DNA from: Dimorphilus gyrociliatus
Lineage: Eukaryota; Animalia; Annelida
DNA length: 46,331 nt
Direction of reading: 5' to 3'
Assembly (NCBI GenBank): GCA_904063045.1
Contig: CAJFCJ010000141.1
Span: forward strand, 25,961-72,291
Both the position numbers and the translations under genes were made by a program. Of the stretch, positions 1,663-45,705 are shown piece by piece. Within the stretch, counting starts at the first letter, position 1, and every line of letters begins with the position of its first letter. The notes beneath the pieces are model-generated. The model was given only the letters and a program-made list of their open reading frames with translations, was not told the origin of the DNA and ran no database searches.

Positions 1663-2079
1663 TATTGGAATATTTTAGAGAAAATGAAGAAAATCAAATT
1701 CTACATCAAAATAGAAACTATAATTTAAGTTGTTTGAAAATTGATAATGAATTTTATACAAAAAATTTTTATTTCAATATTATAAAAATGGTGATAAAAT
1801 CATTAATTTTTTTGCATAGTCATTCATTGTGTCTTAATAAAGAAATCCATTTGAATAATATTGTTTTTGATGCAAGTTTTTAGATTTCTTATTCTTTGTT
1901 TAATCAGTGTTTTTTTTTATCTTTTGCAATCTTTCTTTTAGTCTATAAGTCAAAAATATTTTCTGCTGATAAATCGTATAAAAGGATACAGAGTGGAATG
2001 CCATCACAATGATATTAAACAATATGGACATCTTGTTAGAAAAACACTACAAAAACTTTTATTGTTCATAATAAATTAA
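1663..2079 (+). CDS. Gene A pseudokinase C-lobe exons (1663-1871, 1942-2079)
   Basis: ILEYF...IIKMVIKSLIFLHSHSLCLNKEIHLNNIVFD | ...HNDIKQYGHLV. Phase-1 intron 1507-1662 and phase-0 intron 1872-1941 keep the frame with the TM7 exon. Confidence 0.65.
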
Positions 2080-2367: not shown

Positions 2368-2800
2368 TTAAAAAGATAACCATAATTTATTTGAAAGAGT
2401 CTTCTTTTGTAGAATTCTTTTTACAATTATCCCGAGACATTCAATGTCACGTGGTTCATTCTTCTCATTTAATATAAATAGAAAATTTCTTTTTAATATG
2501 AAATTTTTCATAGAATTCTAACAAATTGTTTAATAAAGAAAAACAATTAGAGATAATTAGAGTAATGAGTATTGAATATTTGAAAATCAATGATACTTAC
2601 ATCATAATAAATGCTCTCTATTGATATCTTACCATTTAAGGAGAAACCACAAGAATGAGTAAAGATAATTGTTTGACATATATCCTTTAAACATTTTACA
2701 TAATTCATATTTTTAAAAAATTGGTGTGTTATAACAAGTTTTTCGGCTTTTTGAGGAAAAGTAGAATATAAATCATCAAATTCTTCAAAAAAATTTAAAA
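2368..2800 (-). CDS. Gene B pseudokinase C-lobe exons (2800-2601, 2517-~2368)
   Basis: LNFF...VKCLKDICQTIIFTHSCGFSLNGKISIESIYYD | gtaagt ... EPRDIECLGIIVKRIL. Intron 2859-2801 is phase 1 and intron 2600-2518 is phase 0. Confidence 0.7.
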
Positions 2801-5800
2801 CTGTACAAAAAATGAAAAATTAATGAAAAAGAAAATTCAAATTTCCTGTTTTTTTTTACATTTTTCTCTTTCACTTTTTTTAACTTTTGCTATCAATTCA
2901 ACCTTTTCTTTCATTTTGAACATTTTTCTATTTTTCAAATTCTCTTGAATTTGTCCAAATGTTGATATAATTGGATTTAACAAAGAATTTAGAGGAATTA
3001 CAACAATTACTATTAAATTATATAAAACATCTGTCAATTCAATTTTTAGTTTAAGTGATAAAATTCCTTAAAAGAAGACATTGATAATGAAATGAATATA
3101 AAAAAGGGCAAAATGCAAAAAATTAAACCTAAAATTGAAAATGGCAGCCATAAAATAATATTTGAAAATGTTAATACAAAGATTGCTATTCTTATATTTC
3201 CTGTTTTCTTATTATTTGTATTTGCTGAATTAGAAGACATGACCTTCTTTTGCCTTCTTACAATATAAAATAAATGAAAATATAGAATTGCTATTATCAA
3301 ACTAACAAATGGTATGAAAATTGAAAATAGAAAAAATGGAAATATCCAACCAGATATTTTTTCACTAGTAATATGAATATAAAAACAAATTGAAGATATT
3401 GTATACAATTTCTGTGTTCAAAACAATTTTTATTTATGTCTAAAATTTATTGACCTTTTTTTTCTTGTTTTATTTACGTGGCCAAAGAAGAGAGGGAAGC
3501 ACGATAATAGGACAATAACACCAAAGACTACTATGTTTATATAGACTGAATATTTTGTTAAATATTGAATACCCATTGGTCTTGTTATTACTTGATGTCT
3601 TTCAATTGCCAATAACAACATACTTATTACTGATAACAAAATGGAAAATGTCATTATCGTTCCCAAGAATTGACATAGGCTACTTTCTTTCCAAAATATT
3701 GAATTATCCAAATAATTGCCACTGTAATATACATTGGCACAGGCTAGTATTAAAATATATAAAGATATTGAGCCATTTCCAAATGACAACATTATATTAC
3801 AAATTTTAGATTTTCCTATTTTCTTCAAAGTATAAATAATTGACGAAATGTTGGCCAATAAACCAAAAATTCCATAAAACCAACAAAGTAAACTTGCCAA
3901 GTTCGAACCAATTAAACGGCTACAAGTTTGAAAAATTGACGTTGATGGTTCGCAAGCCTTATCACTTCCTCTATATTTCCAAAATAGACAGCAAAAATGA
4001 AAATTATTTCCAGATATATAATTCAAATTCTTTAAAGAGTTTAATATATTGTGAAATATATTGGTTGGTATGTCAGTTTTGTCAAATGATAACTTTTCTA
4101 ACGAGGTCAAAGGTTGAAAAGTGTCAATTTGAATAGAATTAATAGGACAGTAATTAATTTGAAGTGATTTTAAATGAGTACAAAATTGAAAATGTAAATG
4201 ATTAAGTGAGAAAATGTTTGTGTGCGAAATATCTAAAGTTTGTAGATGTTTACAAGACAATTGATTTAAGAACATTAAATTTGAAATTGGATTAAAAGAC
4301 AGTTGAAGATGTTGAAGTATTAATAGAGGTTTTTGTAAAATGTTTGCATCTTCATTCATTTCACATTTCACGATTGTCAAATTCACTAAATTTGCAAAAT
4401 AGCCCAACGAATATTTCACATAATTTTCATTCTTCTCCAAATAGAGCAACGCCAATCTCGTTGAATTTTTCAACACATTTTCATCTGTATTTCCGGTTAT
4501 TGAGATTTTCCTGAATCCTTCTTCAACCGTCAAACTTTCAGATTCACCTTTTTCTTTGAAATTGCATTGCAGTTGCAGATGATTCACAACTCTGCAATTG
4601 GGGTTAGAGACGCGGGGCAATTTGCAGTATATCTCATCGCTGCCCTTTTGGCAATGAATCACTGTATCGCATACTTTGCTGATCAGCAAGTGTCTATTCT
4701 CGCCTCTGCACTTGAAATATCCTTTCATTGCTATCTTTTCTGCAACGAACGAAATGATTTAGACAGGTGAATCGTTTGCCCGCAAAATGTACCGCAATGG
4801 AATTCGTCATCTCCCAGTAGACAATGATCCACTCCGTCACAAACTAATTCAATAGATATACAGTAATTTCTCCTATAGCAGAGGTAGAAACCCCGAGGAC
4901 AAGATTCTCTGTTGCAGTCATTTTGCGACATTAGAATTGTGTTTTTAATAATTCCAGTACTGAACACTTCGACAAAACATTCCTTAGGTTGTTTAATATG
5001 ACGGTGACCTTTGTAGAAATTAGTCAAATTGAATCTTGAATAGAAATTGTAATTTTCAGATTCATCATTTTTGGCGATACAGTCGTATTTGAAATCATCG
5101 ACAAACTCTTTTGGAATACAATAACTTCCACAATCTGCTTGATATTGCTCATTGCAGTCTAAAAAATGGAAAGTATTTTAATGATATCATGAAAAACCAA
5201 ACATTCGTTTATACTTTCTCTATATTCATTCGATATTGCATCAACATTTTGGCATTTTTCATCACTTTCATCGATGCAGTGTCTTTCATTATCACAAATA
5301 TTTTCTCTCTTAACGCATTCTCCATTTTTACATTTTCTGCAAGAAATATAAAACAAGAATTATAAGTTTTGTAAGAATTGAGAGAACTGTTTTTCGAATG
5401 TGATAGATAGACGAAAAAGAGAGAGAGAGAGGGGAAAGAGGGAGGAAAGCATCGAGTGACTAATTAATTATGGTCATCATCTTCCTAGACGTTTTCTATC
5501 AACTGCGAATTTTTTTAAAACTAACATTTCATGATCAGCACATGAGCTTGTCTCTTGTAAAAACAAAAACAAAAGAAAGCAATGAGAATTAAGTTGATAA
5601 AATTACTATTAGTTTTATTTAGGTTATACCGCAAAAAGTTTCGTCCAATTTATCTTCACAATCATTTACAAAATCGCAAACTTTAAAAGAGTGAATCTTC
5701 TCTCCGGATGATACACATGAAAATTGATTATTAATTATTTGAATTGAGCAATTTTCTTCATCTTCCCCGCTGTAACAATCTTTGAAATTATCGCAAAGAT

Positions 5801-13600: not shown

Positions 13601-16600
13601 CTTGAATGTAGAAAAGGAGGAGAAAAAGACATCTCTCTTTGTAAACCAATGATAAATACAAAGTTAAAGCATTTTCATTTTAGTATGGGATAAAAACAGA
13701 AAACATTGAATGATTTTACAATATTAAAACTTTAACTGTTATTTCTATGTTTTCTATTAATATCCCCCATCCTCCCTATTCCTTATTTAAACACATTAGT
13801 ATATTAATGTAAATATAAATAGACAAATTACTGAGTGGTTTCCATATGAAATTGAATGTTCAAATCAAATTACTGAAGGTATTTAATCAATCAAAATTTA
13901 AACAAATATAACCTTAATTAAATCATATTACAATTGCAATAAACATTAGACTGCAATGGAGAATTTGTTGTTATAATTGATGACATTTGTTATTATATTT
14001 ATGATAGAAAAAAAACAATGACAATTTATGAAATGAAAATTCAATGTTCAAAGAGAAATTTAATAATACCCGATTATCCTACTTTATCAAAACCATTTAC
14101 ATTACATCTCCTTTCAATTGTTCAAAATAATTTATTAAATAAATCAATATCTTCAATGTATTCATGTAAAAAATATATATATATATATTTTACAATTTAT
14201 TCAAATTTTAAATATCTATTTCTTCTTTTAAAAGATATGGTTAAAGTTAACAATTATTATCTAAGTGAAAGAAATTTATCAATGTCTTTACCAATGTTTT
14301 ATAGTAGACAAGTTTGTAGATTATTTCTTTCAAAAAATATGTTTTTATTTATAAATTAATGTTTTAAAAGATAGATGAATATTTTCCTAAATTCAACACA
14401 TTACAATTTCTTCCAAATACTTTAGAAGAGTCAAAGAAATGCTATCAAATTAAATTTATTAATAATACTATATTTGTAGATAATTTTTTTCTTTTCACTT
14501 TTTCAAGTTTTTCTGTTTTTTTTGTTTGTTTTTTTTTTTAAACAGAATTTTCTAGAATGGACTAAATTATTGAAAAGTCAAACTTATAAAGTAAAATTCT
14601 CTGGGTGTTTTTCTTTTTTTAAATATTTTTAACCCTTTTTCATTCCATACAATAGAACATAAGCGAAACGGAAAAAGACAATCTTATTTTAAAATTTTGC
14701 CAATTATTTCCAGTAAAATTTCTTTTTTTTTTTTATTTAAAAAAGTTATAAAAAAATATCTCGTTTTTTTCTTTTTACAGAATTATCATAATCTTATAGA
14801 AAAAGAAAATCGCTTGCCATTTAGAACTATGGTGAATATGAAAACCATGCCATGATCTTTTATTGAATATAAAATCATTATCTTTTTTAATAGGAAAAAC
14901 ATCTTCTTTTCTCATTTGCTAATAATCTACCTTGCCCAAAATCTAAGGTATTTTTATAACAGATTCACTAATGAATTTTATAAGGCTTATTGATAAATTT
15001 AAATCAATAATCTCTTTCTGTCATACCAATTGTAATATATTTCAATTATAGATTTCACTTTTAGACAAAATTAATAGTCAAAGATTAGAATTTGATGATG
15101 AAAACTGCCACTATACAGTTAGTAATTTATTGTTATGTCAAAAACTTCCAATTAAAACTTATTCACTAAGTATTTTAATATTTACTTTCTCCATTCAATC
15201 TCATTTTCTTATCAATTGACAGGAAACAATTTCAATTTAAATGTTTTCAACCTTAATTTTACTATCCATCAAGAAAATATTTTCTACTGTACCAAAGATG
15301 GAATATACATCAATTTTTATTATCTTTGTGATGGTATTTTTGATTGTCTAAATGGAGAAGATGAGGAAAATTGCCATGGAGAAAATATCAATGAAGTTTC
15401 TTGTATATCATCAACAGAAAAAATAAGCCTACTCCATTTTTGTGATTATATAAATGATTGCAAAAATAATTTTGATGAGATATTATGTAGTAAGGCGGAT
15501 AGGTTTTTTACTTTTAAGGAGTTTTTGAAAATGTCCCAATTACGTACAATTGTATCTTAGATTTTTAATTAAGAGAAATAGCTAAAGAAATTGGAAAAGA
15601 AAAAAAAATCATAAACATTTTCACTGGCATCCTTAATCTTTAAAATTCAATTTTTACTAAATTAAAATTTTTCCCTTTTTTTTTCTAGTTAGAGACGACT
15701 GCCCAATAAATTTTATGTAATTTTCTAAAATCCTAAATCTTCTTATCACTAAAAATAAAGGGGCCAATAGAAAACGTCTCCAAGTGAGATCTTTGAAAGC
15801 AATATTTCGGATTGAAAAATGGTTAAGAGGAGTAAAGTAGCTTTTGATTTGAGGTTAGGGGGTTCCATCTAACAGTTACGGGTAATCAAAAAGGTTAGAG
15901 AGAGACAAGGCCTAAGTTAGGGTTAGGATTAAACCATGCATTTCGGGACGTTTTCTGTCGTATCCAAAATTAAAATAATATTAACCATTTTAAAACCGTC
16001 TTACAGAAAATGTAAAAATGGAGAATGCGTTAAGAGAGAAAATATTTGTGATAATGAAAGACACTGCATCGATGAAAGTGATGAAAAATGCCAAAATGTT
16101 GATGCAATATCGAATGAATATAGAGAAAGTATAAACGAATGTTTGGTTTTTCATATCATTAAAATACTTTCCATTTTTTAGACTGCAATGAGCAATATCA
16201 AGCAGATTGTGGAAGTTATTGTATTCCAAAAGAGTTTGTCGATGATTTCAAATACGACTGTATCGCCAAAAATGATGAATCTGAAAATTACAATTTCTAT
16301 TCAAGATTCAATTTGACTAATTTCTACAAAGGTCACCGTCATATTAAACAACCTAAGGAATGTTTTGTCGAAGTGTTCAGTACTGGAATTATTAAAAACA
16401 CAATTCTAATGTCGCAAAATGACTGCAACAGAGAATCTTGTCCTCGGGGTTTCTACCTCTGCTATAGGAGAAATTACTGTATATCTATTGAATTAGTTTG
16501 TGACGGAGTGGATCATTGTCTACTGGGAGATGACGAATTCCATTGCGGTACATTTTGCGGGCAAACGATTCACCTGTCTAAATCATTTCGTTCGTTGCAG

Positions 16601-19024
16601 AAAAGATAGCAATGAAAGGATATTTCAAGTGCAGAGGCGAGAATAGACACTTGCTGATCAGCAAAGTATGCGATACAGTGATTCATTGCCAAAAGGGCAG
16701 CGATGAGATATACTGCAAATTGCCCCGCGTCTCTAACCCCAATTGCAGAGTTGTGAATCATCTGCAACTGCAATGCAATTTCAAAGAAAAAGGTGAATCT
16801 GAAAGTTTGACGGTTGAAGAAGGATTCAGGAAAATCTCAATAACCGGAAATACAGATGAAAATGTGTTGAAAAATTCAACGAGATTGGCGTTGCTCTATT
16901 TGGAGAAGAATGAAAATTATGTGAAATATTCGTTGGGCTATTTTGCAAATTTAGTGAATTTGACAATCGTGAAATGTGAAATGAATGAAGATGCAAACAT
17001 TTTACAAAAACCTCTATTAATACTTCAACATCTTCAACTGTCTTTTAATCCAATTTCAAATTTAATGTTCTTAAATCAATTGTCTTGTAAACATCTACAA
17101 ACTTTAGATATTTCGCACACAAACATTTTCTCACTTAATCATTTACATTTTCAATTTTGTACTCATTTAAAATCACTTCAAATTAATTACTGTCCTATTA
17201 ATTCTATTCAAATTGACACTTTTCAACCTTTGACCTCATTGGAAAAGTTATATTTAGATTTTAAGAATTTTTCATTAAATGATCAATATTATATATTTAA
17301 ATCATTGAAAAATTTAAAATATGTTAGAGGGAATAGTTTCTATTTTTGTTGTCTTTTAAAAACATCTGAAAGAGAGAAGATATTTTGTGAGGCATCATCA
17401 TCAATATTTGAATCATGTACACAAATCATAGGATCTCAAATACTTCATATTTTTTGTTGGATATTCGGAATAATTGGTTTTTTGATGAATATTTTAGCAG
17501 GTTTTTTGGTTTTAACAAGGGTAGAAAATAATAAGATTTATCATTTAATGCTGTGTTTCGGGAATATTTTAATACCTGTCTTTCTTTTAACACTTGGTTT
17601 TGTGAATGTGTATTATAGTGGCAATATTTTGGAAACTTTAATAACATGGAGAGAAAGTAGAATTTGCCAACTAATGGAAATGATAACAACATTTTCCATT
17701 TTATTATCATTTACAATTATTCTTGTATTGAATATTAAAAGATATCAAAGAATATTATGGCCATTGAGTATAGATCATTGTTTAAAACATAAACATATCA
17801 ATTTCATTTCTTTAAGTATCTTTGGAATATTGGTTTTAGTATCTTGCATTCCATTTTTCCAGGAAAAGGTATTAAACAAAGCTATATGGGTTTGGTAAAA
17901 GTCTTGTATTATAAGGCAATTTCAACAGCAAGATGATGACATACTTTTATCCAAAACCCTATTGATTTATGATTAGAGAATGAATACCATAAATTTTGTT
18001 TTTTAACCCTGAACAGAATCCTAATGATAAATCATATTTATGTATAAATATATTAATTTCAAATAAGGAAACTACTCATTGGATATTTACATTCTTCCTT
18101 TTCTCTATCTTCATACCATTACCTCTTTTAATAATAATATTTTTATATATTCATTTGATATGTTTTGCAAAAAATCCAGTAAAAATTTTAACTATTGGAG
18201 ATCGACTTTTTATTCTAACTTTATTAAATGCAATAATATGGCTACCAGTTTCTATTATAAGTATATTGTTATAGATTTCCTCTTATATAGTATGTCTATT
18301 AGTATAATAAACATTTGCAAAAATACAAAATAGGCCTATTATCAATAACAATGAATTTTCAATTAACAAATATGCCATATAATCTTATTATAATATTTCA
18401 AATTCCAATGGGATCCTTAATGAATCCTCTTGTTTTCACATTTCGAGAAATTCATCATTTGTATAAAAGGAAAAAATTACTAGAAATTGAAAATAAAGCT
18501 AAATTAATTTCTGAAACTGGTTTGTTTGAAAGGAAAACATGTATGAAAAATCAATCTTTTTTTTATCTCTCTCTCTCTCTCAGTATTTAACCTTCAATTT
18601 AAGCCTATTTTCTCATCTCTTTTTATTTTTTTACAGTTTTAAAATTTATAAAAAAAGAAAAAAAATTCTTTTTATTGAAAAATGAAAATTTGAAGAAGTT
18701 AAAAATAACAAAAAGTTTTATTGAAAATTTTCAATTTTTGAAATGTTTAAAAGATATTTGTAGATTATTGGTTTTGACACATTTTAGCCAATTATCACTC
18801 AATGGTGTGATTAACTTTGATAATATATACTTTATAGTTAATTTTAATTTTTTTCATGATTTCTCTTCTTAGCATAACTTTAATTTTTTTTTCTTAATTA
18901 GCCCTACAAAGAGAAATATGTTCTAAAGAGAGACAATCTTTATCTTAAGGATATTGAAAATGAAAAATGTGATATAAATTCCTTTGGTCTATTAGTTAAA
19001 ATGTGTCTTCAATATAAAATTTAG
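10619..19024 (+). CDS. Receptor paralog C: same architecture as B (SP, SRCR-like x3, CTLD-like, LDLa x6, LRR, 7TM, pseudokinase C-lobe)
   Basis: Exons colinear with B: 10619-10950 SP/SRCR-like; ~12070-12310 and ~13450-13660 SRCR-like; ~13950-14160 CTLD-like (CNGEFVVIIDDICYYI...KIQC); ~15250-15490 two LDLa; 16007-16128; 16182-16547; 16601-17868 (LDLa-LRR-TM1-4); 18017 onward TM5-6; TM7 exon ending 18540; kinase-like exons. The 3' end is approximate. Confidence 0.8.
16004..17237 (+). repeat. Copy 2 of the near-identical inverted 1.24-kb tract
   Basis: See 4103-5339. First mismatch at 17238 versus 4102. Homology starts at the CAG splice acceptor 16004-16006. Confidence 0.95.
18637..19024 (+). 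CDS. Gene C pseudokinase C-lobe exons (18637-18836, 18902-19024)
   Basis: FLKF...LKCLKDICRLLVLTHFSQLSLNGVINFDNIYFI | ...EKCDINSFGLLVKMCL (subdomain IX D-x-x-S-F-G). Intron 18541-18636 is phase 1 and intron 18837-18901 is phase 0 (weak GTTAAT donor). Confidence 0.7.
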
Positions 19025-19439
19025 AAATGGATCAATGAAGAATTTTTTTAAAATAAAGAAACAGTAAACAGTTAAAAAATTGGTTTTTTTATTACATTAA
19101 AGTTTAAAGACTGTTCATGACTCATATTCTGATTATTGATTAATAAAAGTATTTTAAAAATATTGTTGTTAACTTGTAGTCTATATTTTATTCATTTTTT
19201 TAACATATTAAAATGACAAATGTCTTTGCTCATTATGTTTAAGAATGTCGAAATGCCATTTAAAAATTGTACTATAGGACACAGATGATCAACAACAGGA
19301 TAATAAAATTGCAGATAAATGTCACTGAAAGCAATAAGTCACATAATTATCTTATATCATTTCATTATGATTTGTATGATGAACGGAAGATGGATACTGA
19401 TAATTAAATGAATTACAAATTCAAGTTTTGGGAGTGATC

Positions 19440-20890
19440 CTAATTTTAAAGTTAGTGATGTTGAATAAGGCTCATTTAAAAAAGAATTTGCCGATTCTCC
19501 TAAATTTGAATTTATAGAAAATGGTAGCCAACAAGGAAAGGGTTTATTCATTCCTAATGACTTTTCTTCTAATAAAAATTCAACTTGTTTCCTCAACTAA
19601 AACATAGTTTCTTAATGGTACTTTTAAATATGCTCATAATACTTTCTCTGTAAATGGATGTCTGAAAAAAACTGATGAATTAAAGCAAGTAATTGCAAAT
19701 GTGTTTATACAGCCTTGATAGTATGAGTTTTAATGTAATAGTTAAGCATGGTAAGCATTTTCAACAACCTGTCAATCATCTTATTCCTGGGAAAGCTTAT
19801 CTGCAAACAACTTCAATTGGAACAAGTCTTCTACTATTCAAAAATGGATGCTATTTTCGTAATTTGGTACATCAAAGCCATGTACCACCACCAGGACCCT
19901 ATGAACCTTGAAAGACCCTATGAACAGTTTTTTGATTATTGTACTCACCCAGGAAGTCAAAAAACTGATAGGAATCTGGTGGAATACAAAATGACAAGAC
20001 ATGTATTCGAGGTAAAGAACAACCTGTATGTGGTTTCAGCAACATTGAGAATGGTGCTGAAAGCATCCAGCTTGAACATGGAAGAAAGGGAAGAGGCAGA
20101 AAGATGCTTCTACATTGATGACCTCATTTTAGTGTCTGACAACGAAGACTATCTGGACAAGGTATTGATACAAGCATTAAGCCTTGGCCCTTTGTAACTA
20201 CTTCACTTTGACTTTAAATAATGTCAAATTCTGAGGAATTGATCAAATAAATCCCGCTTGAAACAAAGCCCAGTGAGTACCCTAGAATTGTATGGGGAAT
20301 CCAGTAAACAGAACAACAGAATCAGCTGCAACCTGGATAACTTGGCATTAGGCCCAAAGGCAACATGGAGAGAAATCCTGAGGGTAATAGCAAAGATCTG
20401 TGATCCTTTAGGCTTAGCGAACATTGTGGTGGCAAAACTTTGAGTGATGTTCTCGATGTTAAGCAAGGATGACCAGCAGTATTCCTGACGGATTCAGAAG
20501 TAGTCCTAAAGTACAATAGAGGTGCAGATGAAGAAATATGCAAGAGCAGGAATAACTGAAATAAGACAGTACGCAAGCCCCAATCAATAGTATCATGTAA
20601 AGAAACAGAAGAACCCTGTAGACTGGTTAATGAAACTGCCAGCGAAATTCAACAAAGAAAGGTATGATGAATGGAAAGAGAGAATAATGACAACGTCATA
20701 GTCTCAAAGGGCGTGCAAAATTCTGTTGTTAATAAACCAGCTAGTAAAGAGTATGACTTATAAGTTCCAAAGAACAGGCAGGAAACTGACTGAGGACAGC
20801 TCAATGCAACAAGAGATAGAAACATTGAAATGCTCCAAACAGGGTCAAGGGCTGGGTCAGGGTTGAAGTAAAACCACAAAACTGATCATT
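19440..20890 (+). mobile_element. Decayed BEL/Pao LTR retrotransposon pol fragment
   Basis: IKAMYH, EYKMTRHVF and FYIDDL match BEL/Pao-type RT; TWREILRVIAKICDPLG matches the Pao peptidase A17/RNase H region. Many stops and frameshifts. Boundaries approximate. Confidence 0.75.
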
Positions 20891-21230
20891 TTCAACAACA
20901 TTCTACTAAAAATTACCTACTCTGCTATTGAACTTTGAAATCGTACCCAATGAGAGTGAATCCCTCTTTAGGTATATCCAAGTATCATTGAGGTTGTTGA
21001 TACTTATGGCAATAATAAAAAAATGATGTATTATGATTATTTGAATATTGTTAAGAAATGACAAGACACAGTTGAAGTGTATAAAAACTAAAGAAAGAAT
21101 AGAAAAGAATAACTATGGAGTGTGAATATATGATGTTTGGATTAATAATTCATCAGCCAATATCTTTCCAAGTGTATAATTATCCCAAATTTCTAATATT
21201 TTCCTCTCTATATCACTATTTTTGTTTCTC

Positions 21231-23809
21231 TCATACTTTATGATCCTCCTCAATGGGTACAATCTCACAATTTTCAAAAAAATGTCTGCCTACTTCTGTT
21301 CCAAGTGAATTATTATACAGATGCAATGTGGTAAGGTTGGTTTGTCGTCCAATTGCATCTCCAATAACGCAACCAATGTTTGATTCTAGTTCACAAGAAG
21401 CAAGACTGATTGCACTTAAATCTGAGCAATTCAACTTAATATTTTCAAAGATACTCTTTCCAACTTCTGATCCCAATTTATTACCTTCAAGATTCAACCA
21501 TTTAAGTCCTTTTTGTTTTCCAATTGCATCTCCAATGACAAAACCAATGTTTGATTCTAGTTCACAAAAAGAAAGATTAATTAAAGTTAATTGTGTGCAA
21601 TTCAACTTAATATTTTCAAAAATACTCATCGCAACTACTGATCCCAATATATTATTATAAAGGTACAATCTTGTAAGTTTCTTTTGTTTCCCAACTGCAT
21701 CTCCTATACCACAACCAATATTTGGTGCAAACTCACATGAAACAAAACAAATTGTTGTTAATTCTGTGCAATTCAACTTTATATTTTCAAAAATATGTCT
21801 GCCCACTTCTGTTCCAAGTTGATTATTTTGAAGATACAATGTAGTGAGTTTAGTTTGTTTTCCAATTGCCTCTCCTATAACGCAACCAATATCTGAATTA
21901 AATCCACAATTACCAAGCTCCAACTGTGTCAATTTTATACAAGAATTTTTGATATTTTCAAAAATACTTTTCCCAGCTTCATATCCAAACTGATTATCAT
22001 TCAGATTCAGGTAGATAAGTTCTTTAAGCTTCCCAATAGCTTTTCCTATAATGCTACCAATGTTTGGCTCAAATGCACAATTGGCTAAAGACAAAATAGT
22101 TAATTGTCTGCAATTCTTTTCAATATTTTCAAAAATAAGTTTTCCAACTTCTGAGCCAAAATGGTTGTGACCTAGATATAACTTAGACAACCTTTCTTGC
22201 TCTCCAATTGCTTCACCAACAACTGAACCTACATTTGAGTCAAAACCACAATTCTCAAAATCAATTCCAAAAAATTGTCTACAATTTGCTTTAATATTTT
22301 CAAAAATATTTTTTCCAATGTCTGATCCAAGTAAATTACCTTGAAGTGTCAATATTTTGAGTCCTTTGAGTTTACCTATTGCTTCAGCAATAGTACATCC
22401 AATATTTGAATCAAATCTACAGTTGTTTAGATATATTTCTGATAATCTGGTGCAATTTGTTTTGATATTTTCAAATAAATTTTTTCCCACTTCGGTCCCA
22501 AGTGGATTGTCTGAAAGATTCAGTTGAGAGAGCTGTTTTTGCTTTCCAATTGCTTCAACAATAGCTTCACCAATATTTGATTCAAGATCACATTTTATTA
22601 GATTTATTTTAATTAATTTGCTTACAATTATCTTTAATGTTTTCAAATATATTTCTTCCAACTACAGATCCCACTGCATTGTTTCCAATGTCAAGGACAC
22701 TTAATTGTTTTTGCTTGCCTATTGCTTCACCAATAGCGGGTCCAATATTTGAATCAAATCCACAGTTGTTTAGATATATTTCTGATAATCTTGTGCAATT
22801 TGCTTTAAGATTTTCAATTAAATTTTTTCCCACTTCTGTTCCAAGTGGATTGTTTGACAGATCCAGTGCAGTGAGATGTTTTTGCTTGCCTATTGCTTCA
22901 CCAATTACCAGGCCAATTTGTGATTCTATTCCACAGTTATTTAAGCAAATACTTGATAATTTTGTGCAATTTCTTTTAATGTTTTCAAAGATTCCAATGC
23001 CAACTTCTGTTCCAATTGGATTTTTTGTCAAAGATATTCCAGTAAGCTCTGTTTGCTTACCAATTACTTCACCAACTATTGGACCAATTTCTGATTGTAA
23101 TCCACAATTATTCAGACAAATTGTTGACAAATGTGTACAGTTAAATTTAATATTTTCAAAAATATGCTTTCCAACTATAGTTCCAAATTTATTATCTTGC
23201 AGAAAAAGTTCTGTTAGTTGAGTTTGTTTACCTATTGCTTCCCCAACTATTGGACCAATTGCAGAATCAAATCCACAGTTGTCAAAAGCAATTTTGCTCA
23301 ATTTTGTGCAGTTAAATTTAATATTTTCAAAAATATACTTTCCGACTATAGTTCCAATTTCATTATGTTGCAAATACAGGAGTGATAGTTGAGTTTGTTT
23401 ACCTATTGCTTCACCAACAATTGAGCCAATTTCAGACCCAAATCCACAGTTGTCAAAAGCAATCTGGATTAATTTTGTGCAAGTTCCTTTAATATTTTCA
23501 AATATATTTTTTCCTACTTCAGTTCCCAGAGGATTATTTGAGAGTTGTAACACAGTAAGGTCACTTAGCTTTCCAATTGCTTTACCAGCAGTATTACCAA
23601 TATCTGATCCCAACCCACAGTTAGATAGGTCAATGCATGCTAATTTTGTGCAAGTTCCTTTAATATTTTCAAATATATTTTTTCCTACTTCAGTTCCCAG
23701 AGGATTATTTGAGAGTTGTAACACAGTAAGGTCACTTAGCTTTCCAATTGCTTTACCAGCAGTATTACCAATATCTGATCCCAACCCACAGTTAGATAGG
23801 TCAATGCAT
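21231..23809 (-). CDS. Ribonuclease-inhibitor-type LRR array (about 15 units of 57 aa, about 30 LRRs); 5' end cut by an LTR; one +1 frameshift near 22620
   Basis: Alternating LxxLxLxxNxLG and LxxIxLxxCG(F/L) repeats in ORFs 22609-23784 and 21231-22661. An extra A in CAAATTAATT shifts the frame. No NACHT or other N-terminal domain is visible. Confidence 0.85.
23470..23809. repeat. Perfect tandem duplication of one 171-bp (57-aa) LRR unit
   Basis: 23470-23640 is repeated at 23641-23809, with the second copy truncated by 2 nt at the LTR. Confidence 0.95.
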
Positions 23810-24444
23810 TGTACAACTTTGGTTATATTTTACATGCTTGAACTCTATTATTTTATGCAACATATACATGTACATCTTAAAACCTACGCAAGAAAATGCT
23901 ATAACATTGGCCAAACATAAGTCTGATTAGTCAGCTTGAAGGCTCATCTTTAATTACCAATAAAGGTTTGGCCAAGTTATAATTTAATTAACTTGCCTAA
24001 AGTGTGGCCAAGTTATAATTCAATTAACCTTCCTAAATGTTGAACCTTGTAACATCCTGTTACTAAAGATAAATATGAACTACACATTTCGGCAACTGTA
24101 AAGTGATGATTGGATGTCAGAGACAAACCTCAAAGTATATAAATCCTCATTATTCTCATTTGGCATGCAGCTTCCATCTGGACCCAAGGACCTGGGAAAG
24201 TCATCTGGAAACAACCTCCACTGGAACCATCCATCTACTCCTCAACATTAGAAGACAGTTTGGTAATTTGGCAACCTGCTTTTACAAACTATCTACTCTG
24301 CTATCGAACTCTCATATCATTACTTGCTTAAGTATTATTATTGCGAATAAACCGTTTTAATTTAAACATTTGTTTAAAGGTTCGAGTAGAACCAGTATTG
24401 TTATAACTTGCAAACGCATAGATTTTGCCAGCAAGAGCAGTACA
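23810..24444 (+). repeat. 5' LTR (635 bp, TGTAC...GTACA)
   Basis: Terminal inverted repeats, TATATAAA at 24136-24143, AATAAA at 24346-24351, a duplicated TGGCCAAGTTATAATT motif in U3; matches 30244-30873 and 42395-43029. Confidence 0.95.
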
Positions 24445-24448
24445 AATT

Positions 24449-24466
24449 TGGTGCAGTCGACAGGAT
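24449..24466 (+). promoter_or_regulatory. Primer-binding site, tRNA-Ser-like
   Basis: TGGTGCAGTCGACAGGAT lies 4 nt after the LTR. The related copy at 33353 reads TGGCGCAGTCGACAGGAT, resembling the complement of eukaryotic tRNA-Ser 3' ends. Confidence 0.75.
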
Positions 24467-24504
24467 ATTCTTTTGGTTTATTCAAAAGTTTTGAGAAAGT
24501 AAAT

Positions 24505-27500
24505 ATGGCAGAAGGAGGAAATGGAAACGCCACTGGGGCAGTTACAGACTCTAACCCTTCAACCCCAGCAACTCCAACAATTACAATTCAGCCAGCAGGA
24601 ATGTCAGAAAGGCAACAAAGACTAATTGAAGACTATGATAGATTGGTGAGTGAAATGAAAAGAAATCGAATCACAATTCCAACAGATCATGGAGATGGAA
24701 CACATCACCCAGCACAGAACCCAAATGTTGATATCACAACAGTAATTCAAGCATTAAGGGCTGCTTGGGACCGCCCTCAAAGAACTATTCTCAAGTTGTA
24801 TGATGGAAGCAAGGAGTGTTCAAAATTCAAAGAAGACTTTAATCAGGCATGTTATGCTTATGGTTGGATAGGAGAAGATGTTGTGAAAGCAAATCTTTTA
24901 GATTATTTAACTGGTCCTGCAAAGGATTTGGTGTTGGCTCTGGATGGAGAGCCTACTGTGGAGGAAATATGGAAAGCCCTCCATGACGAATTTGATCTAG
25001 ATCCTTTGAAGTATCAGGAGAAATTGCTTAACTTAAAGCAAATGAATGGCGAAAGTGTGGTTCAGTTTGTTAATAGAGCAAAGAAATTGATAAAGAGGTT
25101 TTCTCCACCTAGACCAATGGAACCACAATTGCTTGCAACTATGAAAGAAATAAAACTGATGGAAGTTTTACAAAGAGGATTACAACAGGATATTCTACAT
25201 TTAGTGTACACCTTACATCCTAAATGTCAAACATTGGCAGAACTATATGAGGCTGCTAAGCAAGCAGAAACTTCATTAAAACTAACTCAAAGAAAACCGA
25301 TCACAATGGTGTCAAAATTGGAAACTCAACAAAGAAAAGAGACCAAAAAGACCCAGGTAATCAGAAAAGATGCTTCTACAGAAACCCCAAATTTTTGGAA
25401 TAGAAAGCATGTACCTGACAACAAAAATGCTACTAAAGAAAAGTTTTCAAGCCAAAAAGTCCAAAAGTATGCACCAACTACAACAAATAGGTATTATAAG
25501 AAAAATCAACCAGCAAAGACAATACTGAAAGAGGAACCTAAGCTACAAAAATTAGAAACATTAGACAATGAAAGCATGTCAGAAAACGACGAAGTTCAAG
25601 ATATTCTCTGTTTTTCAGATAGTGACGAATCCACTTGTCAGCTGTTACAAAGCAAACAATCTGAGCGAAATGCTTCAACATTTATTGGACAATTTGAAAC
25701 TAATACTGGTTTTAAGTTTGATGCCTTGATAGACTCTGGTAGTGACAGATCTTTCATTTCAAAAAAGGTATTAAGACAAGTTCAAGGAAAAGCATCCTTC
25801 CCAGAACAAACTGTGAAAAATGCTAGAGATGCTTCAGGAAATAGCATCGAGATATGTGGAGAAATCATTCTCAGACTTTATTTTAATGGAAAGATTATTA
25901 AACAACGCTTTCTGATCAACAAAATCATTACACAACAATGTATTATTGAGTGTGACTTTCTACAACAAAATGGAGCTACCCTTGACTTTGGCAAGAGACA
26001 GATTATACTCCAGCCAGGTACAGAAAAGAATTACCCTGTTGGAACACAACACTTATCTTTCAAAGGATTTTACCCAGTTCCTCTTATTACGAAAAAGAAC
26101 AAGAGTCAAATACATACCCTTCAGACAACAATTGAACAAGAAAATCCCGAGATGAAGAACAAAGTTACCCAAATTCTGGCAAAATATAAAGAAACTATTG
26201 CAGAAGACAGATTTGATATTGGCAATCCAGAGGTACCACCCTTGGAAATAACTCTTGAACCAGGTTCAACACCATATAGACAAAGGCCATATAGAATGCC
26301 TCCTCAAAAACAAGAAGAATGTAAGCAACAGATAGCTGAATTGGTAAAAAGCAAAGTTATTCAACCAAGCAAGAGCAATTGGGCTTCACCAATTGTTTTC
26401 GTAAGAAAGAAGGAAGGTAGTCTACAAATGTGTGTAGATTATAGAAAACTAAACAAAATGACAGTTAAAAACAAGTATCCACTGCCAAATCAAGATGATC
26501 TTTTTGACCATTTGGGAGGAGGAAATAAATTCTTTTCTACAATGGATTTGACAAGTGCATACCACCACATTAACATCAAGAAAGAAGATAGGTCTAAAAC
26601 AGCATTTATTACACCTTTTGGCTTGTTTGAATTTATTAAGATGCCTTTTGGATTAACCAATGCCCCTCCTCATTTTAGTTATGTAATGAATTCATTTGTG
26701 CTAAAGGATGTAAAGCATTTGTGCCTAAACTACCTTGATGACATAATAATATTTACCAAGTCGCTGGACCAACATTGGGAAGCATTGGAGACCATTCTTC
26801 AACAGATTCAAAAGTACAATTTTAAGATTAAACTAAGTAAATGTGTGTTTTTGAAAGAACAAGTTCAATTCTTGGGACACATTGTATCAGAAAAGGGGAT
26901 TGAAACAGATAAGTCCAAGACAGATAAATTATATAATTTACAGCCACCAGTGTTTGCAAATTCACTACTAAGCTTTGTTGCATTTTGTGGCTATTACAGA
27001 AAATTTATACAAGATTTTGCAAGAGTAGCTAAACCTCTGTATATGTTAATGAAACTACATGGGAAAAAGGATAAATTGCAATGGACTGAGGAAGCCAAGC
27101 AATCATTTTTCAAGTTGAGAGATGCAGTAGTTAACCCTCCTGTATTACAACTACCTGATTTTGCTAAAGATTTTCACTTAACAACAGATGCATTGAATGT
27201 AGCTGTAGGAGGAGTTCTTGAACAAGTTTATGTAGATGAGAATGGGAAGAAAACAATGAAACCCATTGCCTACGCTTCAAAACAATTCAACAATAATCAA
27301 ATGAAATATGCAGCCTATCAAAAGGAAGCATTTGGGGTTTACTGGGTTGTAAAGAAATTTTTACATTACCTTCAAGACAAGCCATTCTTTTTATATACTG
27401 ACCATCAGAGTCTAGTACAAACATTTAAGCAAAACAAATTGAATGTCAGCACAGCAAAATGGGTCATGGCTTTAATGGATTTAAAATTTACAATTAACTA

Positions 27501-45481: not shown

Positions 45482-45705
45482 GTTAGCTCTTCCTGTGTTG
45501 GCTATAGTTGAATGGTTGAAAATTTTGTGTTGTTGTTCCACTCTGATAGTTATTCCATCTTCTAACTCTATATATGTGGTTCCACTTCTTGTTGGAATCT
45601 AATTGTTCAGAGATGATTTTAGTCTCATCTAAAAATATGACTGACTCATTGTCTGTTGCACTTGTATTTTCTTTCTCATCTTGGGATGAATCTACCACTA
45701 TGAGG

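What the first reader, a model, noticed from the sequence alone, without database searches (positions are those of the whole stretch)
18315..19024. GPCR-pseudokinase fusion: a GRL101/LGR-like 7TM receptor spliced in frame to a dead kinase C-lobe (gene C)
Seen: the apparent stop after TM7 is bypassed by a phase-1 intron (GTATGA at 18541 to TTACAG at 18636). The next 200-nt exon reads ...LKDICRLLVLTHFSQLSLNGVINFDNIYF, and a phase-0 intron leads to KCDINSFGLLVKMCL. Established: this matches kinase subdomains VIa/VIb and IX, most closely the kinase-homology domain of receptor guanylyl cyclases (DIVKGMxFLH...HGNLKSSNC...DVYSFG). The HRD aspartate, DFG and the entire N-lobe are absent, and no cyclase domain is visible downstream. 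Inference: this is a rhodopsin-class receptor with a built-in pseudokinase scaffold, an architecture I do not know from animal GPCRs. It is invisible in a plain ORF track.
Basis: partly seen in the sequence, partly recalled or inferred. Interest (0 to 1): 0.9.

Follow-up and report, generated by a model that had tools for sequence, protein, structure and literature searches.

The report
Hormone-type receptor with dead half-kinase tail
Three neighbouring receptor genes of the GRL101/LGR type end in two extra small exons that encode the catalytically dead middle piece of a protein kinase, and the same tail sits unannotated on dozens of such receptors from molluscs, mites, echinoderms and amphioxus without appearing in any paper I could find.

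Summary
After TM7 of gene C, a 96-nt phase-1 GT-AG intron (18541-18636) removes the stop at 18588-18590. Two small exons follow, 18637-18836 and 18902-19024.

The same two exons, with the same intron phases, follow TM7 in paralogs B and A. They are conserved only in the claimed frame. A probably transcript-derived contig runs from the second exon's acceptor (18902) to 7 nt past an AATAAA. No read crosses the TM7-to-tail junction.

The window exons alone hit no kinase. They are, however, clearly homologous (hhalign P 1e-9; HMM 17-31 bits; 0 of 1000 shuffles) to a C-terminal domain I found on 60 of 146 GRL101-like receptors from other bilaterians.

That domain is kinase-derived:
- Its profile hits 695 PDB kinase sequences at E<=1e-3, led by the GCN2 pseudokinase domain (1.6e-11) and VRK3.
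- 8 of 30 members hit Pfam Pkinase.
- An AlphaFold model (pLDDT 88) matches only kinases.

The tail spans alpha-D/E to alpha-F. It lacks the N-lobe, the HRD Asp, DFG and the activation segment.

The claimed closeness to guanylyl-cyclase kinase-homology domains is not supported. Function is untested.

The scan has flagged this architecture before on another piece of this genome.

The parts
16601..17868 (+). Gene C exon: last LDLa repeat, LRR region, TM1-TM3
   Evidence: Pfam LRR_8, LRR_4, 7tm_1 and Ldl_recept_a on ORF 16612-17895. A transcript-like X1 contig joins 16546/16600. Donor GT at 17869.
18017..18260 (+). Gene C exon: TM4-TM5
   Evidence: 38% identical to paralog B by tblastn, E 3e-13. 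AG|18017 acceptor and 18260|GT donor.
18334..18540 (+). Gene C exon: TM6-TM7 (NPLVF) and about 34 residues after it, ending ...ERKT
   Evidence: tblastn to paralog B, E 4e-14. Splice sites.
18541..18636 (+). Phase-1 intron (GTATGA...TTACAG, 96 nt) holding the in-frame stop at 18588-18590
   Evidence: Sequence. Homologous phase-1 introns in paralog B (2859..2801) and paralog A (1507-1662). No read across it.
18637..18836 (+). Tail exon 1: alpha-D/alpha-E helix and degenerate catalytic loop (LTHFSQLSLNGVINFDNIYF)
   Evidence: Paralog conservation. hhalign against other animals' tails, P 2.1e-4. Family HMM alignment.
18837..18901 (+). Phase-0 intron (GTTAAT...TTAG, 65 nt)
   Evidence: Sequence. 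Same position and phase in paralogs B and A. An X3 contig starts exactly at 18902.
18902..19024 (+). Tail exon 2: beta-8-like strand, short linker, alpha-F motif DINSFGLLVKMCL, stop 19022-19024
   Evidence: hhalign P 2.4e-5 to the family's DI..FG.LV motif. That motif aligns to DIWSIG of STK33. X3 contig 18902-19064 with 0 mismatches.
19025..19064 (+). Short 3' UTR with AATAAA at 19052-19057; the contig ends at 19064
2601..2800 (-). Paralog B tail exon 1
   Evidence: tblastn E 7e-12, 44% identity to gene C. Splice sites; the donor coordinate for B was 2 nt off and was corrected by reading the sequence. Family HMM 16.7 bits.
2368..2517 (-). Paralog B tail exon 2, with stop at 2370-2368
   Evidence: tblastn E 9e-5; alignment A2.
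1663..1871 (+). Paralog A tail exon 1 (FLHSHSLCLNKEIHLNNIVFD), followed by a GC-AG intron at 1872-1941
   Evidence: Family HMM 31.2 bits.
1942..2079 (+). Paralog A tail exon 2 (DIKQYGHLVRKTLQK), with stop at 2077-2079

Best explanation
Genes A, B and C are paralogous LDLa-LRR-7TM receptors of the GRL101/LGR kind. In each, the coding sequence continues past the apparent stop after TM7, through a phase-1 intron into two small exons.

These exons encode the last ~106 residues of a ~140-residue cytoplasmic tail. They form a small folded module descended from the central core of a protein-kinase domain: alpha-D/alpha-E, the catalytic-loop hairpin, the beta-8 strand and alpha-F.

The module has no N-lobe, so no ATP site. 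Its HRD triplet reads LNG or LNK. It has no DFG. About 30 residues of activation segment including APE are missing. The protein ends about 15-25 residues after the subdomain-IX Asp-x-x-x-x-Gly. It therefore cannot phosphorylate anything.

It belongs to a widespread, so far undescribed C-terminal domain family of bilaterian GRL101-like receptors.

Inference only: the module serves as a rigid intracellular docking or regulatory surface about 35 residues after TM7. Receptor activation would change what binds it, as pseudokinase domains do in JAKs, KSR or receptor guanylyl cyclases. Here there is no enzyme domain attached in cis.
For: Exons and splicing:
- Canonical sites.
- Same exon order and intron phases in three paralogs, and frame-specific conservation.
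- A contig from the exon-2 acceptor to a poly(A) signal.

Membership in the tail family:
- hhalign of the spliced three-sequence alignment against 11 tails: P 2.7e-7, score 43.8, against 9.5 +/- 1.5 for 200 column shuffles.
- Against 34 tails: P 9.8e-10. HMM scores are 22.7, 16.7 and 31.2 bits for C, B and A, and 0 of 1000 shuffles reach them.
- Each exon separately hits the colinear part of the family profile.

Kinase origin of the family:
- Pkinase 43.9 bits on amphioxus P0120 and PK_Tyr_Ser-Thr 26.8 bits on Ptychodera P0083, both above the Pfam cut-offs.
- 8 of 30 tails hit Pkinase.
- The family profile hits 695 PDB sequences at E<=1e-3, and the best 60 are all kinases or pseudokinases.
- An AlphaFold2 model of the mite tail has pLDDT 87.6. 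Its top 50 PDB and top 30 Swiss-Prot Foldseek matches are all kinase-fold proteins.

Distribution:
- 60 of 146 fetched receptors carry the tail, always directly after TM7 and at the protein's end.

Nothing follows:
- No kinase remainder or cyclase downstream.
Against: - No read or contig crosses 18540/18637 or 18836/18902. X1 has zero depth over 17772-18849.
- X3 is labelled 'DNA?' by the tool, and its transcript nature is my inference.
- The window exons on their own have no significant similarity to any kinase. The kinase link is transitive.
- The window's own tail could not be modelled, because a spliced protein has no reference. The fold is shown only for a mite homologue.
- Foldseek E-values are modest (4e-3 at best), because the module is short.
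- Paralog A uses a GC donor and might be decaying.
- The proposed docking function has no direct evidence.
Confidence: 0.85

Rival explanations
1. The two exons are evolutionary relics. The ancestral tail exists in the genome, but in this species the mRNAs normally stop at the stop codon just after TM7, or the intron is retained, so the receptors lack the module.
For: No read spans the TM7-to-tail junction, and there is no coverage of exon 1 in X1. Paralog A has a non-canonical GC donor.
Against: All six tail exons keep open frames, and all but one of the splice sites are canonical. The family's key columns are kept across about 60% amino-acid divergence, the same divergence as the TM exons. 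Conservation is frame-specific. Exon 2 is present in a contig bounded by its acceptor and a poly(A) signal.
Confidence: 0.08
2. The tail is a real, conserved receptor domain, but it is not kinase-derived. The resemblance is convergence of a helix-hairpin-helix motif.
For: The window exons alone hit no kinase. Foldseek E-values are only about 1e-2, and TM-scores normalised to the query are 0.46-0.66.
Against: The family profile reaches E 1.6e-11 to 1e-8 against many unrelated kinase subfamilies, over 50-95 columns in the right order. Pfam kinase models pass their own cut-offs on amphioxus and hemichordate members. The amphioxus member extends N-terminally into alpha-C/beta-4/beta-5 (Pkinase positions 37-150). 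Every top structural match is a kinase fold.
Confidence: 0.04
3. It is chance open reading frame in AT-rich 3' flanking DNA. This was my starting guess.
For: Very AT-rich sequence (25% GC), lysine/asparagine-rich peptides, no Pfam hit.
Against: Three paralogous copies and a 34-member external family match it far beyond shuffles.
Confidence: 0.01

Closest known systems
Unannotated C-terminal domain of bilaterian 'GRL101-like' receptors. Examples: Dinothrombium tinctorium RWS13828.1, Mizuhopecten yessoensis 'GRL101' (P0255), Ptychodera flava XP_070539486.1, Branchiostoma XP_078576616.1.
   Same: Same position (starts about 30-60 residues after TM7 and ends the protein). Same length class (140-180 residues after TM7). 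Same motifs (LH..G...G.I...NV.V, then DI..FG.LV). Same ectodomain kit (LDLa, LRR, sometimes CUB or C-type lectin). hhalign P 1e-9.
   Different: The window copies are extremely AT-biased and among the most degenerate. The amphioxus copies keep part of the N-lobe (alpha-C, beta-4, beta-5) and a DFS in place of DFG. Many bivalve copies read HGN where the window reads LNG.
Pseudokinase domains: VRK3, the GCN2 pseudokinase domain, JAK/TYK2 JH2, KSR1, STK40
   Same: These are the best sequence and fold matches of the family profile. The catalytic loop is degenerate, with the HRD Asp lost. By analogy the role is presumably non-catalytic.
   Different: Those are complete bilobal kinase folds of about 260-300 residues that often still bind nucleotide. 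This is a piece of about 75-110 residues, without the N-lobe, the activation segment or alpha-G to alpha-I.
GPCR-kinase fusions: oomycete and amoebozoan GPCR-kinases, choanoflagellate GPCR-TKL/K and GPCR-TK, sponge GPCR-TK (bioRxiv 10.1101/2025.04.15.649019)
   Same: A 7TM receptor followed by a C-terminal kinase-type domain.
   Different: Those carry full, apparently active TK or TKL domains on unrelated 7TM families. That survey, which searched with tyrosine-kinase domains as queries, found GPCR-TKs in no metazoan other than sponges. Here the 7TM is a rhodopsin-class LGR type, the lineage is Bilateria, and the kinase part is truncated and dead.
Kinase-homology domain of receptor guanylyl cyclases
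   Same: A dead kinase-type domain directly behind a membrane receptor. Some family members share the HGN triplet.
   Different: No cyclase domain follows. No guanylyl cyclase is among the best 60 PDB or best 30 Swiss-Prot matches. The KHD is a full kinase fold.
Minimal kinase folds (Bud32/PRPK, Kdo kinase KdkA, Rio)
   Same: They appear among the Swiss-Prot fold matches. Their C-lobes also stop soon after alpha-F.
   Different: They retain the N-lobe and catalytic residues and are active enzymes.

Membership tests
GRL101/LGR-like receptor (LDLa + LRR + rhodopsin-class 7TM) | LDL-receptor class A repeats in the ectodomain | tested here: met
   Pfam Ldl_recept_a on 15216-15557 (32.8 bits) and 15990-16130 (27.9 bits), both above the 24.1-bit cut-off. 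On 16313-16606 it scores 22.9 bits, just under the cut-off.
GRL101/LGR-like receptor (LDLa + LRR + rhodopsin-class 7TM) | Leucine-rich repeats before TM1 | tested here: met
   LRR_8 33.8 bits (cut-off 27) on ORF 16612-17895.
GRL101/LGR-like receptor (LDLa + LRR + rhodopsin-class 7TM) | Rhodopsin-family 7TM related to named GRL101-like, RXFP-like or LGR proteins | tested here: met
   7tm_1 scores 23.1 bits on the TM1-3 piece alone, below the 30.5 cut-off because it is a fragment. phmmer finds 1498 relatives at E<=1e-3, and the named ones are GRL101-like or relaxin-receptor-like. TM7 reads NPLVF, and TM3 has KRY (gene C) or ERH (paralog B) at the DRY position.
Orthologue of Lymnaea GRL101 proper | Groups with GRL101 orthologues in a 7TM tree | tested here: inconclusive
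   In the 28-row tree the window genes sit on a very long, compositionally deviant branch, and the backbone is unresolved. Crayfish GRL101 and urchin 'GRL101-like' P0285 and P0286 lack the tail.
Tail family: C-terminal half-kinase domain of GRL101-like receptors | Significant profile match over alpha-E to alpha-F | tested here: met
   hhalign P 9.8e-10 over 75 columns. HMM scores 22.7, 16.7 and 31.2 bits for C, B and A, with 0 of 1000 shuffles reaching them.
Tail family: C-terminal half-kinase domain of GRL101-like receptors | Lies directly after TM7 and ends the protein; 140-180 residues after TM7 | tested here: met
   The spliced gene C tail is about 141 residues after NPLVF.
Protein kinase domain (ePK), active or pseudokinase | N-lobe: Gly-rich loop, beta-3 Lys, alpha-C Glu | tested here: not met
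   Only about 45 low-complexity residues lie between helix 8 and alpha-E in gene C. The family HMM alignment starts at the hinge/alpha-D at best. No Pfam hit.
Protein kinase domain (ePK), active or pseudokinase | Catalytic loop HRDxxxxN with catalytic Asp | tested here: not met
   Mapped through the family profile to GCN2 HRDLKPVN. Gene C has LN(G)VINFDN, paralog B LNGKISIES and paralog A LNKEIHLNN. The Asp is absent in all three. The Asn is kept in C and A.
Protein kinase domain (ePK), active or pseudokinase | DFG and activation segment/APE | tested here: not met
   There is no DFG at the beta-8 position (LKR in C and B; L-L-I in A). In the STK33 alignment about 30 residues of activation segment have no counterpart in the profile.
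Protein kinase domain (ePK), active or pseudokinase | Subdomain IX Asp-x-x-x-x-Gly at the start of alpha-F | tested here: met
   DINSFG, DIECLG and DIKQYG in the window. The profile's DIyqfG aligns to DIWSIG of STK33.
Protein kinase domain (ePK), active or pseudokinase | Kinase fold of the segment | tested here: inconclusive
   Shown for the mite homologue only: pLDDT 87.6, and all top Foldseek matches are kinases. The window's spliced tail has no reference and could not be modelled.
Receptor guanylyl cyclase kinase-homology domain | Followed by a dimerisation helix and a guanylate cyclase domain | tested here: not met
   Stop at 19022-19024, then a poly(A) signal. No Pfam domain in any ORF of 45 residues or more in 19025-21250.
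Receptor guanylyl cyclase kinase-homology domain | Nearest kinase relatives are guanylyl-cyclase KHDs | tested here: not met
   None among the best 60 PDB sequence matches or the best 30 Swiss-Prot fold matches.

The most novel reading that the evidence does not exclude
The bilaterian ancestor had an LGR-type receptor fused to a kinase domain. One old subfamily has kept a trimmed, dead core of it as an obligatory signalling part. On receptor activation the half-kinase would recruit or allosterically switch a cytosolic kinase or other partner. These receptors would then have a G-protein-independent output, a hybrid between GPCR and receptor-kinase signalling. That would bear on Veenstra's idea that GRL101-type receptors and the insulin receptor kinase share ligands (PMC8286064).
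Probability: 0.15. Interest if true: 0.85.

Novelty: new variant of a known kind. Interest (0 to 1): 0.65.

Why it matters
GPCR-kinase fusions have been reported from oomycetes, amoebozoans, choanoflagellates and sponges. [quoted passage not shown]

The tail described here is a conserved kinase-derived module on rhodopsin-class, LGR-type receptors, found in both protostomes and deuterostomes. It has been missed for three reasons:
- It is short and degenerate.
- It is usually below Pfam thresholds.
- In compact AT-rich genomes such as this one it is hidden behind an apparent stop codon.

The finding gives three things:
- A named, alignable domain for dozens of 'uncharacterized' or 'GRL101-like' predictions.
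- A concrete annotation fix for these three genes.
- A testable question: what does a half-kinase do on the tail of an orphan hormone-type receptor?

It is not unique to this genome, and its function is unknown, which limits the score.

Tried and rejected
- Pfam on each window tail exon (C, B, A) at E<=10: nothing.
- Profiles of the three window copies of exon 1 and of exon 2 against PDB sequences: no kinase at E<=10. There were only chance hits to PBP2 and the adenosine A3 receptor.
- ESM Atlas on exon 1: best score 0.67, uninformative.
- Word-indexed homologue search with the 428-aa ORF: a single Logan ORF fragment. Its contigs end just after TM7, so they hold no tail.
- First local HMM of whole post-TM7 tails from 12 homologues: only 3-9 bits for the window tails. 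Pairwise BLASTP was marginal (E 0.04-7). Significance came only with trimmed and deeper profiles.
- 7TM tree, to ask whether tail-bearing receptors form one clade: the backbone is unresolved and the window genes sit on a long, compositionally odd branch. The label is more clustered than chance (4 changes against 9.4 for shuffles), and a single origin is not excluded.
- AlphaFold of the amphioxus tail: mean pLDDT 59, confident only from about model residue 91 to the end. I did not use it for fold search.
- Structure prediction of the window's own spliced tail: not done. A spliced protein has no reference, and I did not type it in.
- Ka/Ks between paralogs: not computed, because synonymous sites are saturated at about 36% amino-acid identity.
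- Literature searches for GRL101 with kinase domain, pseudokinase or kinase-like, and for LGR with pseudokinase and 7TM: no description of such a tail.
Full report
**What is in the sequence**

The window is very AT-rich (21-37% GC) and holds three paralogous receptor genes.

Gene C lies on the + strand. It has LDLa exons, an LRR region and a 7TM region, confirmed by Pfam Ldl_recept_a, LRR_8 and 7tm_1.

Reading the DNA gives this 3' structure:
- LRR/TM1-3 exon, ending at 17868.
- Intron 17869-18016.
- TM4-5 exon, 18017-18260.
- Intron 18261-18333.
- TM6-7 exon, 18334-18540.
- Phase-1 intron 18541-18636 (GTATGA...TTACAG). It contains the in-frame stop at 18588-18590.
- Tail exon 1, 18637-18836.
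- Phase-0 intron 18837-18901 (GTTAAT...TTAG).
- Tail exon 2, 18902-19021, with the stop at 19022-19024 and AATAAA at 19052-19057.

The only slip is that exon 1 ends ...NIYFI rather than ...NIYF.

**Are the tail exons real?**

tblastn of the two exons against the window finds colinear copies directly after TM7 of paralog B (- strand). Exon 1 lies at 2800..2601 (E 7e-12, 44% identity) and exon 2 at 2517..2368 (E 9e-5, 41%). Weaker copies follow TM7 of paralog A (+ strand), at 1663-1871 and 1942-2079.

That divergence equals the divergence of the TM4-5 and TM6-7 exons between B and C (38%). The intron positions and phases (1, then 0) are the same in all three genes. Paralog A uses a GC donor at 1872.

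Conservation is confined to the claimed reading frame. The local BLOSUM score is 131, against at most 60 in the other eight frame pairs, for exon 1 of C against B. It is 70 against at most 31 for exon 2. The introns do not align.

**RNA evidence**

Only Logan contigs were available.
- An X1 contig matches 16007-16128, 16182-16546 and 16600-17158 without a mismatch. It lacks two 53-nt introns, so X1 behaves as a transcriptome.
- That stretch lies in the tract that is near-identical between B and C, so the contig cannot be assigned to one gene. X1 contig 17344-17667 is specific to gene C.
- An X3 contig of 163 nt covers exactly 18902-19064. It starts at the predicted acceptor of exon 2 and ends 7 nt after the AATAAA. 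X1 also has depth in the bin 18850-19003, which holds exon 2.
- Nothing covers 17772-18849, so neither tail junction is directly seen.

I take the exons as real on comparative grounds. RNA support covers the last exon only.

**Is it kinase-like? Direct tests fail**
- Each window exon (C, B, A) gives no Pfam hit even at E<=10.
- Profiles of the three copies of exon 1 (A1) and of exon 2 (A2) find no kinase among 177,635 PDB sequences at E<=10.
- The ESM Atlas is uninformative.

**Indirect tests succeed**

A full HMMER search of 1.84 billion representatives with the 428-aa LRR/TM1-3 ORF found 1498 relatives. Most of the closest are single-exon ORF fragments from unnamed assemblies.

The full-length, named relatives include proteins with a long tail after TM7 (names):
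- Amphioxus, P0120.
- The hemichordate Ptychodera, P0077 and P0083.
- Trombidiform mites, P0134, plus P0171 and P0172.
- The nemertean Lineus, P0103.
- A starfish, P0124.
- Sea urchins, P0142, P0146 and P0168.

Pfam places Pkinase on the amphioxus tail (43.9 bits, E 2.6e-11, model positions 37-150). It places PK_Tyr_Ser-Thr on P0083 (26.8 bits). Both are above the curated cut-offs.

A profile of 11 such tails (A3, no window sequence) hits 1292 PDB sequences at E<=10. The best 60 are all kinases, led by the pseudokinase VRK3 at 1.2e-6.

A third homologue search, from the 7TM plus tail of a Haliotis GRL101-like protein, brought in 120 more receptors. Of 146 fetched receptors with a recognisable TM7 motif, 60 carry the domain. 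It is always after TM7 and at the very end of the protein.
- With the tail: many bivalve paralogs, a sea cucumber, and the groups listed above.
- Without it, among those fetched: ticks, crayfish GRL101, horseshoe crab, corals and the relaxin-receptor-like clade.

The 30-sequence profile A5 hits 695 PDB sequences at E<=1e-3. The leaders are GCN2 (1.6e-11, including its pseudokinase domain), VRK3, TYK2, a JAK, STK33, KSR1, PKR and BRAF. Eight of the 30 members individually hit Pkinase and seven hit PK_Tyr_Ser-Thr.

An AlphaFold2 model of the mite tail has pLDDT 87.6 and pTM 0.79. It shows a short strand, alpha-D, a long alpha-E, a beta-hairpin region and a long alpha-F. Its 50 best PDB matches are all protein kinases: DAPK3, ULK1/2, STK40, Rad53, SYK, RET, JAK1 and others, with probability 1.00, E 4e-3 to 2e-2 and query-normalised TM 0.46-0.63. 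The 30 best Swiss-Prot models are all kinase-fold proteins, including the minimal kinases Bud32 and KdkA, and VRK3.

**Link from the window to that family**

- Exon 1 profile A1 against A3: hhalign P 2.1e-4, columns 29-64 onto 28-62.
- Exon 2 profile A2 against A3: P 2.4e-5, columns 22-39 onto 96-113. The two hits are independent and colinear.
- Spliced tails, built in a script from the window file, against A3: P 2.7e-7. The score is 43.8, against 9.5 +/- 1.5 (maximum 13.7) for 200 column shuffles and 13.3 for the reversed alignment.
- Against a 34-sequence family alignment without window sequences: hhalign P 9.8e-10 (96.5% probability, 75 columns). HMM scores are 22.7 (C), 16.7 (B) and 31.2 bits (A). 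None of 1000 shuffles of each exceeds 12.6.

**Anatomy of the window tail**

I mapped the tail through the family profile onto GCN2 and STK33.
- FLKCLKDICRLLVLTH corresponds to alpha-E, ending in the LH of the 'YLH' motif.
- SLNGVINFDNIYF corresponds to the catalytic loop and beta-7. HRD becomes LNG (LNK in A). The loop Lys becomes N, S or H. The loop Asn is kept in C and A.
- KYVLKR corresponds to beta-8, and there is no DFG.
- About 30 residues of activation segment, including APE, have no counterpart.
- DINSFGLLVKMCL corresponds to DIWSIGVVMYMLL, that is, subdomain IX and alpha-F.
- The protein ends 12 residues (C) to 21 residues (B) after the Gly of that motif.
- There is no N-lobe. Only about 45 low-complexity residues separate helix 8 from alpha-E.
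- Nothing kinase- or cyclase-like lies downstream.

The piece is therefore a dead half of a kinase C-lobe, not a complete pseudokinase domain. Amphioxus keeps more of it (alpha-C, beta-4, beta-5 and a DFS triplet). That suggests progressive trimming of an originally complete domain.

**What is not supported**

No cyclase KHD is among the best 60 sequence matches or the best 30 fold matches. Some bivalve members do read HGN at the HRD position, but so does VRK3. The donor kinase group remains open. Pkinase scores better on amphioxus, and PK_Tyr_Ser-Thr scores better on the hemichordate.

**How it probably works**

Shown:
- A receptor of the GRL101/LGR kind.
- A conserved tail that is predicted to fold (modelled for the mite homologue only) and is kinase-derived.
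- The tail lacks every catalytic element.

Inferred:
- Being rigid, conserved and placed about 35 residues after TM7, the module most likely acts as an intracellular binding or regulatory surface. It would be a docking site for a partner, or a brake on G-protein or arrestin access, in the manner of other pseudokinase modules.
- I give the structural and evolutionary statement about 0.85. I give the docking function perhaps 0.3.

**Comparison with the literature**
- A 2025 survey of GPCRs in choanoflagellates summarises 7TM-kinase fusions as known from oomycetes and amoebozoans. It adds choanoflagellate GPCR-TKL/K and GPCR-TK. [quoted passage not shown]
- Veenstra's treatment of GRL101 as a candidate IGF receptor describes LDLa, LRR and 7TM parts only (PMC8286064).
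- Searches for GRL101 with kinase domain, pseudokinase or kinase-like found nothing relevant. The library holds open-access papers only, so a description elsewhere cannot be excluded.
- Some public predictions (amphioxus, Ptychodera) pass Pfam's kinase thresholds. Automatic annotation may therefore already mark a kinase domain on them.

**Earlier scan notes**

The scan has noted the same architecture on other DNA of this genome. s1-080217 has a follow-up that also found no RNA support, and s1-081291 is a second note. On this window, s1-081432 notes the same exons in paralogs A and B, which I verified. These were leads. The evidence above is independent of them.

**Verdict**

The core interpretation is supported, with three caveats: the tail is a fragment rather than a full pseudokinase, it is not specifically cyclase-KHD-like, and its function is untested. 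It is a new variant of a known kind (7TM-kinase fusions, pseudokinase receptor modules). It is widespread in Bilateria but, as far as I could find, undescribed.

Noticed in passing
window 15770-15970: A stretch of about 200 nt inside an intron of gene C has word depth in the thousands to tens of thousands in all four runs (up to 37,000 in X2). Many diverged copies and loose ends flank it, so it is a very high-copy dispersed repeat (SINE- or MITE-like). Some loose ends at 15903 read GGTTAGGGTTAGGG, which is telomere-type TTAGGG.
   Followed up: no
window 16313-16606 and 5027-4734 (wider tract about 16004-17237): The LDLa/LRR part of gene C and of the inverted paralog B is 100% identical at the protein level over 98 residues. 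The flanking exons are only 38-72% identical. This looks like recent gene conversion between head-to-head paralogs, and it makes transcript contigs from this tract unassignable to B or C.
   Followed up: partly
window 1872-1941: The intron between the two tail exons of paralog A starts GCAAGT, where paralog B has GTAAGT. It is either a GC-AG intron or the first sign of decay of paralog A.
   Followed up: no
window 24370-28308 (+): A 1312-aa ORF with RVT_1, RNase H, integrase zinc-binding and rve domains: a Ty3/gypsy-type retrotransposon. A second long ORF without any Pfam hit lies at 43061-45541 (-).
   Followed up: no
window 21231-23784 (-): Two adjacent long ORFs (476 and 391 aa) made almost entirely of leucine-rich repeats, with many LRR_1, LRR_4 and LRR_8 hits. 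They belong to a separate LRR gene downstream of gene C, on the other strand.
   Followed up: no
run X4, laid on window 15000-19600: Contigs of X4 differ from the window almost only by C>T (198 places) and G>A (381 places). This is the signature of bisulfite-converted DNA, not of strain divergence.
   Followed up: no
window 15202/15203 and 15352/15353: X1 and X3 contigs share identical loose ends, of higher GC, just before 15203 and 15353. These look like splice junctions to upstream exons, and depth there is about ten times that of the rest of gene C. They may mark a separate, more highly expressed transcript or alternative first exons.
   Followed up: no
window 19378-19600 and beyond: A 1605-nt X1 contig runs unspliced through 19378-19600, about 300 nt downstream of the poly(A) signal of gene C. 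It is another transcribed unit. No Pfam domain was found in its ORFs.
   Followed up: partly
window 17740-17760 (gene C) and paralog B equivalent: At the TM3 'DRY' position gene C reads KRY and paralog B reads ERH. TM7 reads NPLVF (C) and NPIIS (B) instead of NPxxY. The G-protein-coupling motifs are degenerate in these paralogs.
   Followed up: no
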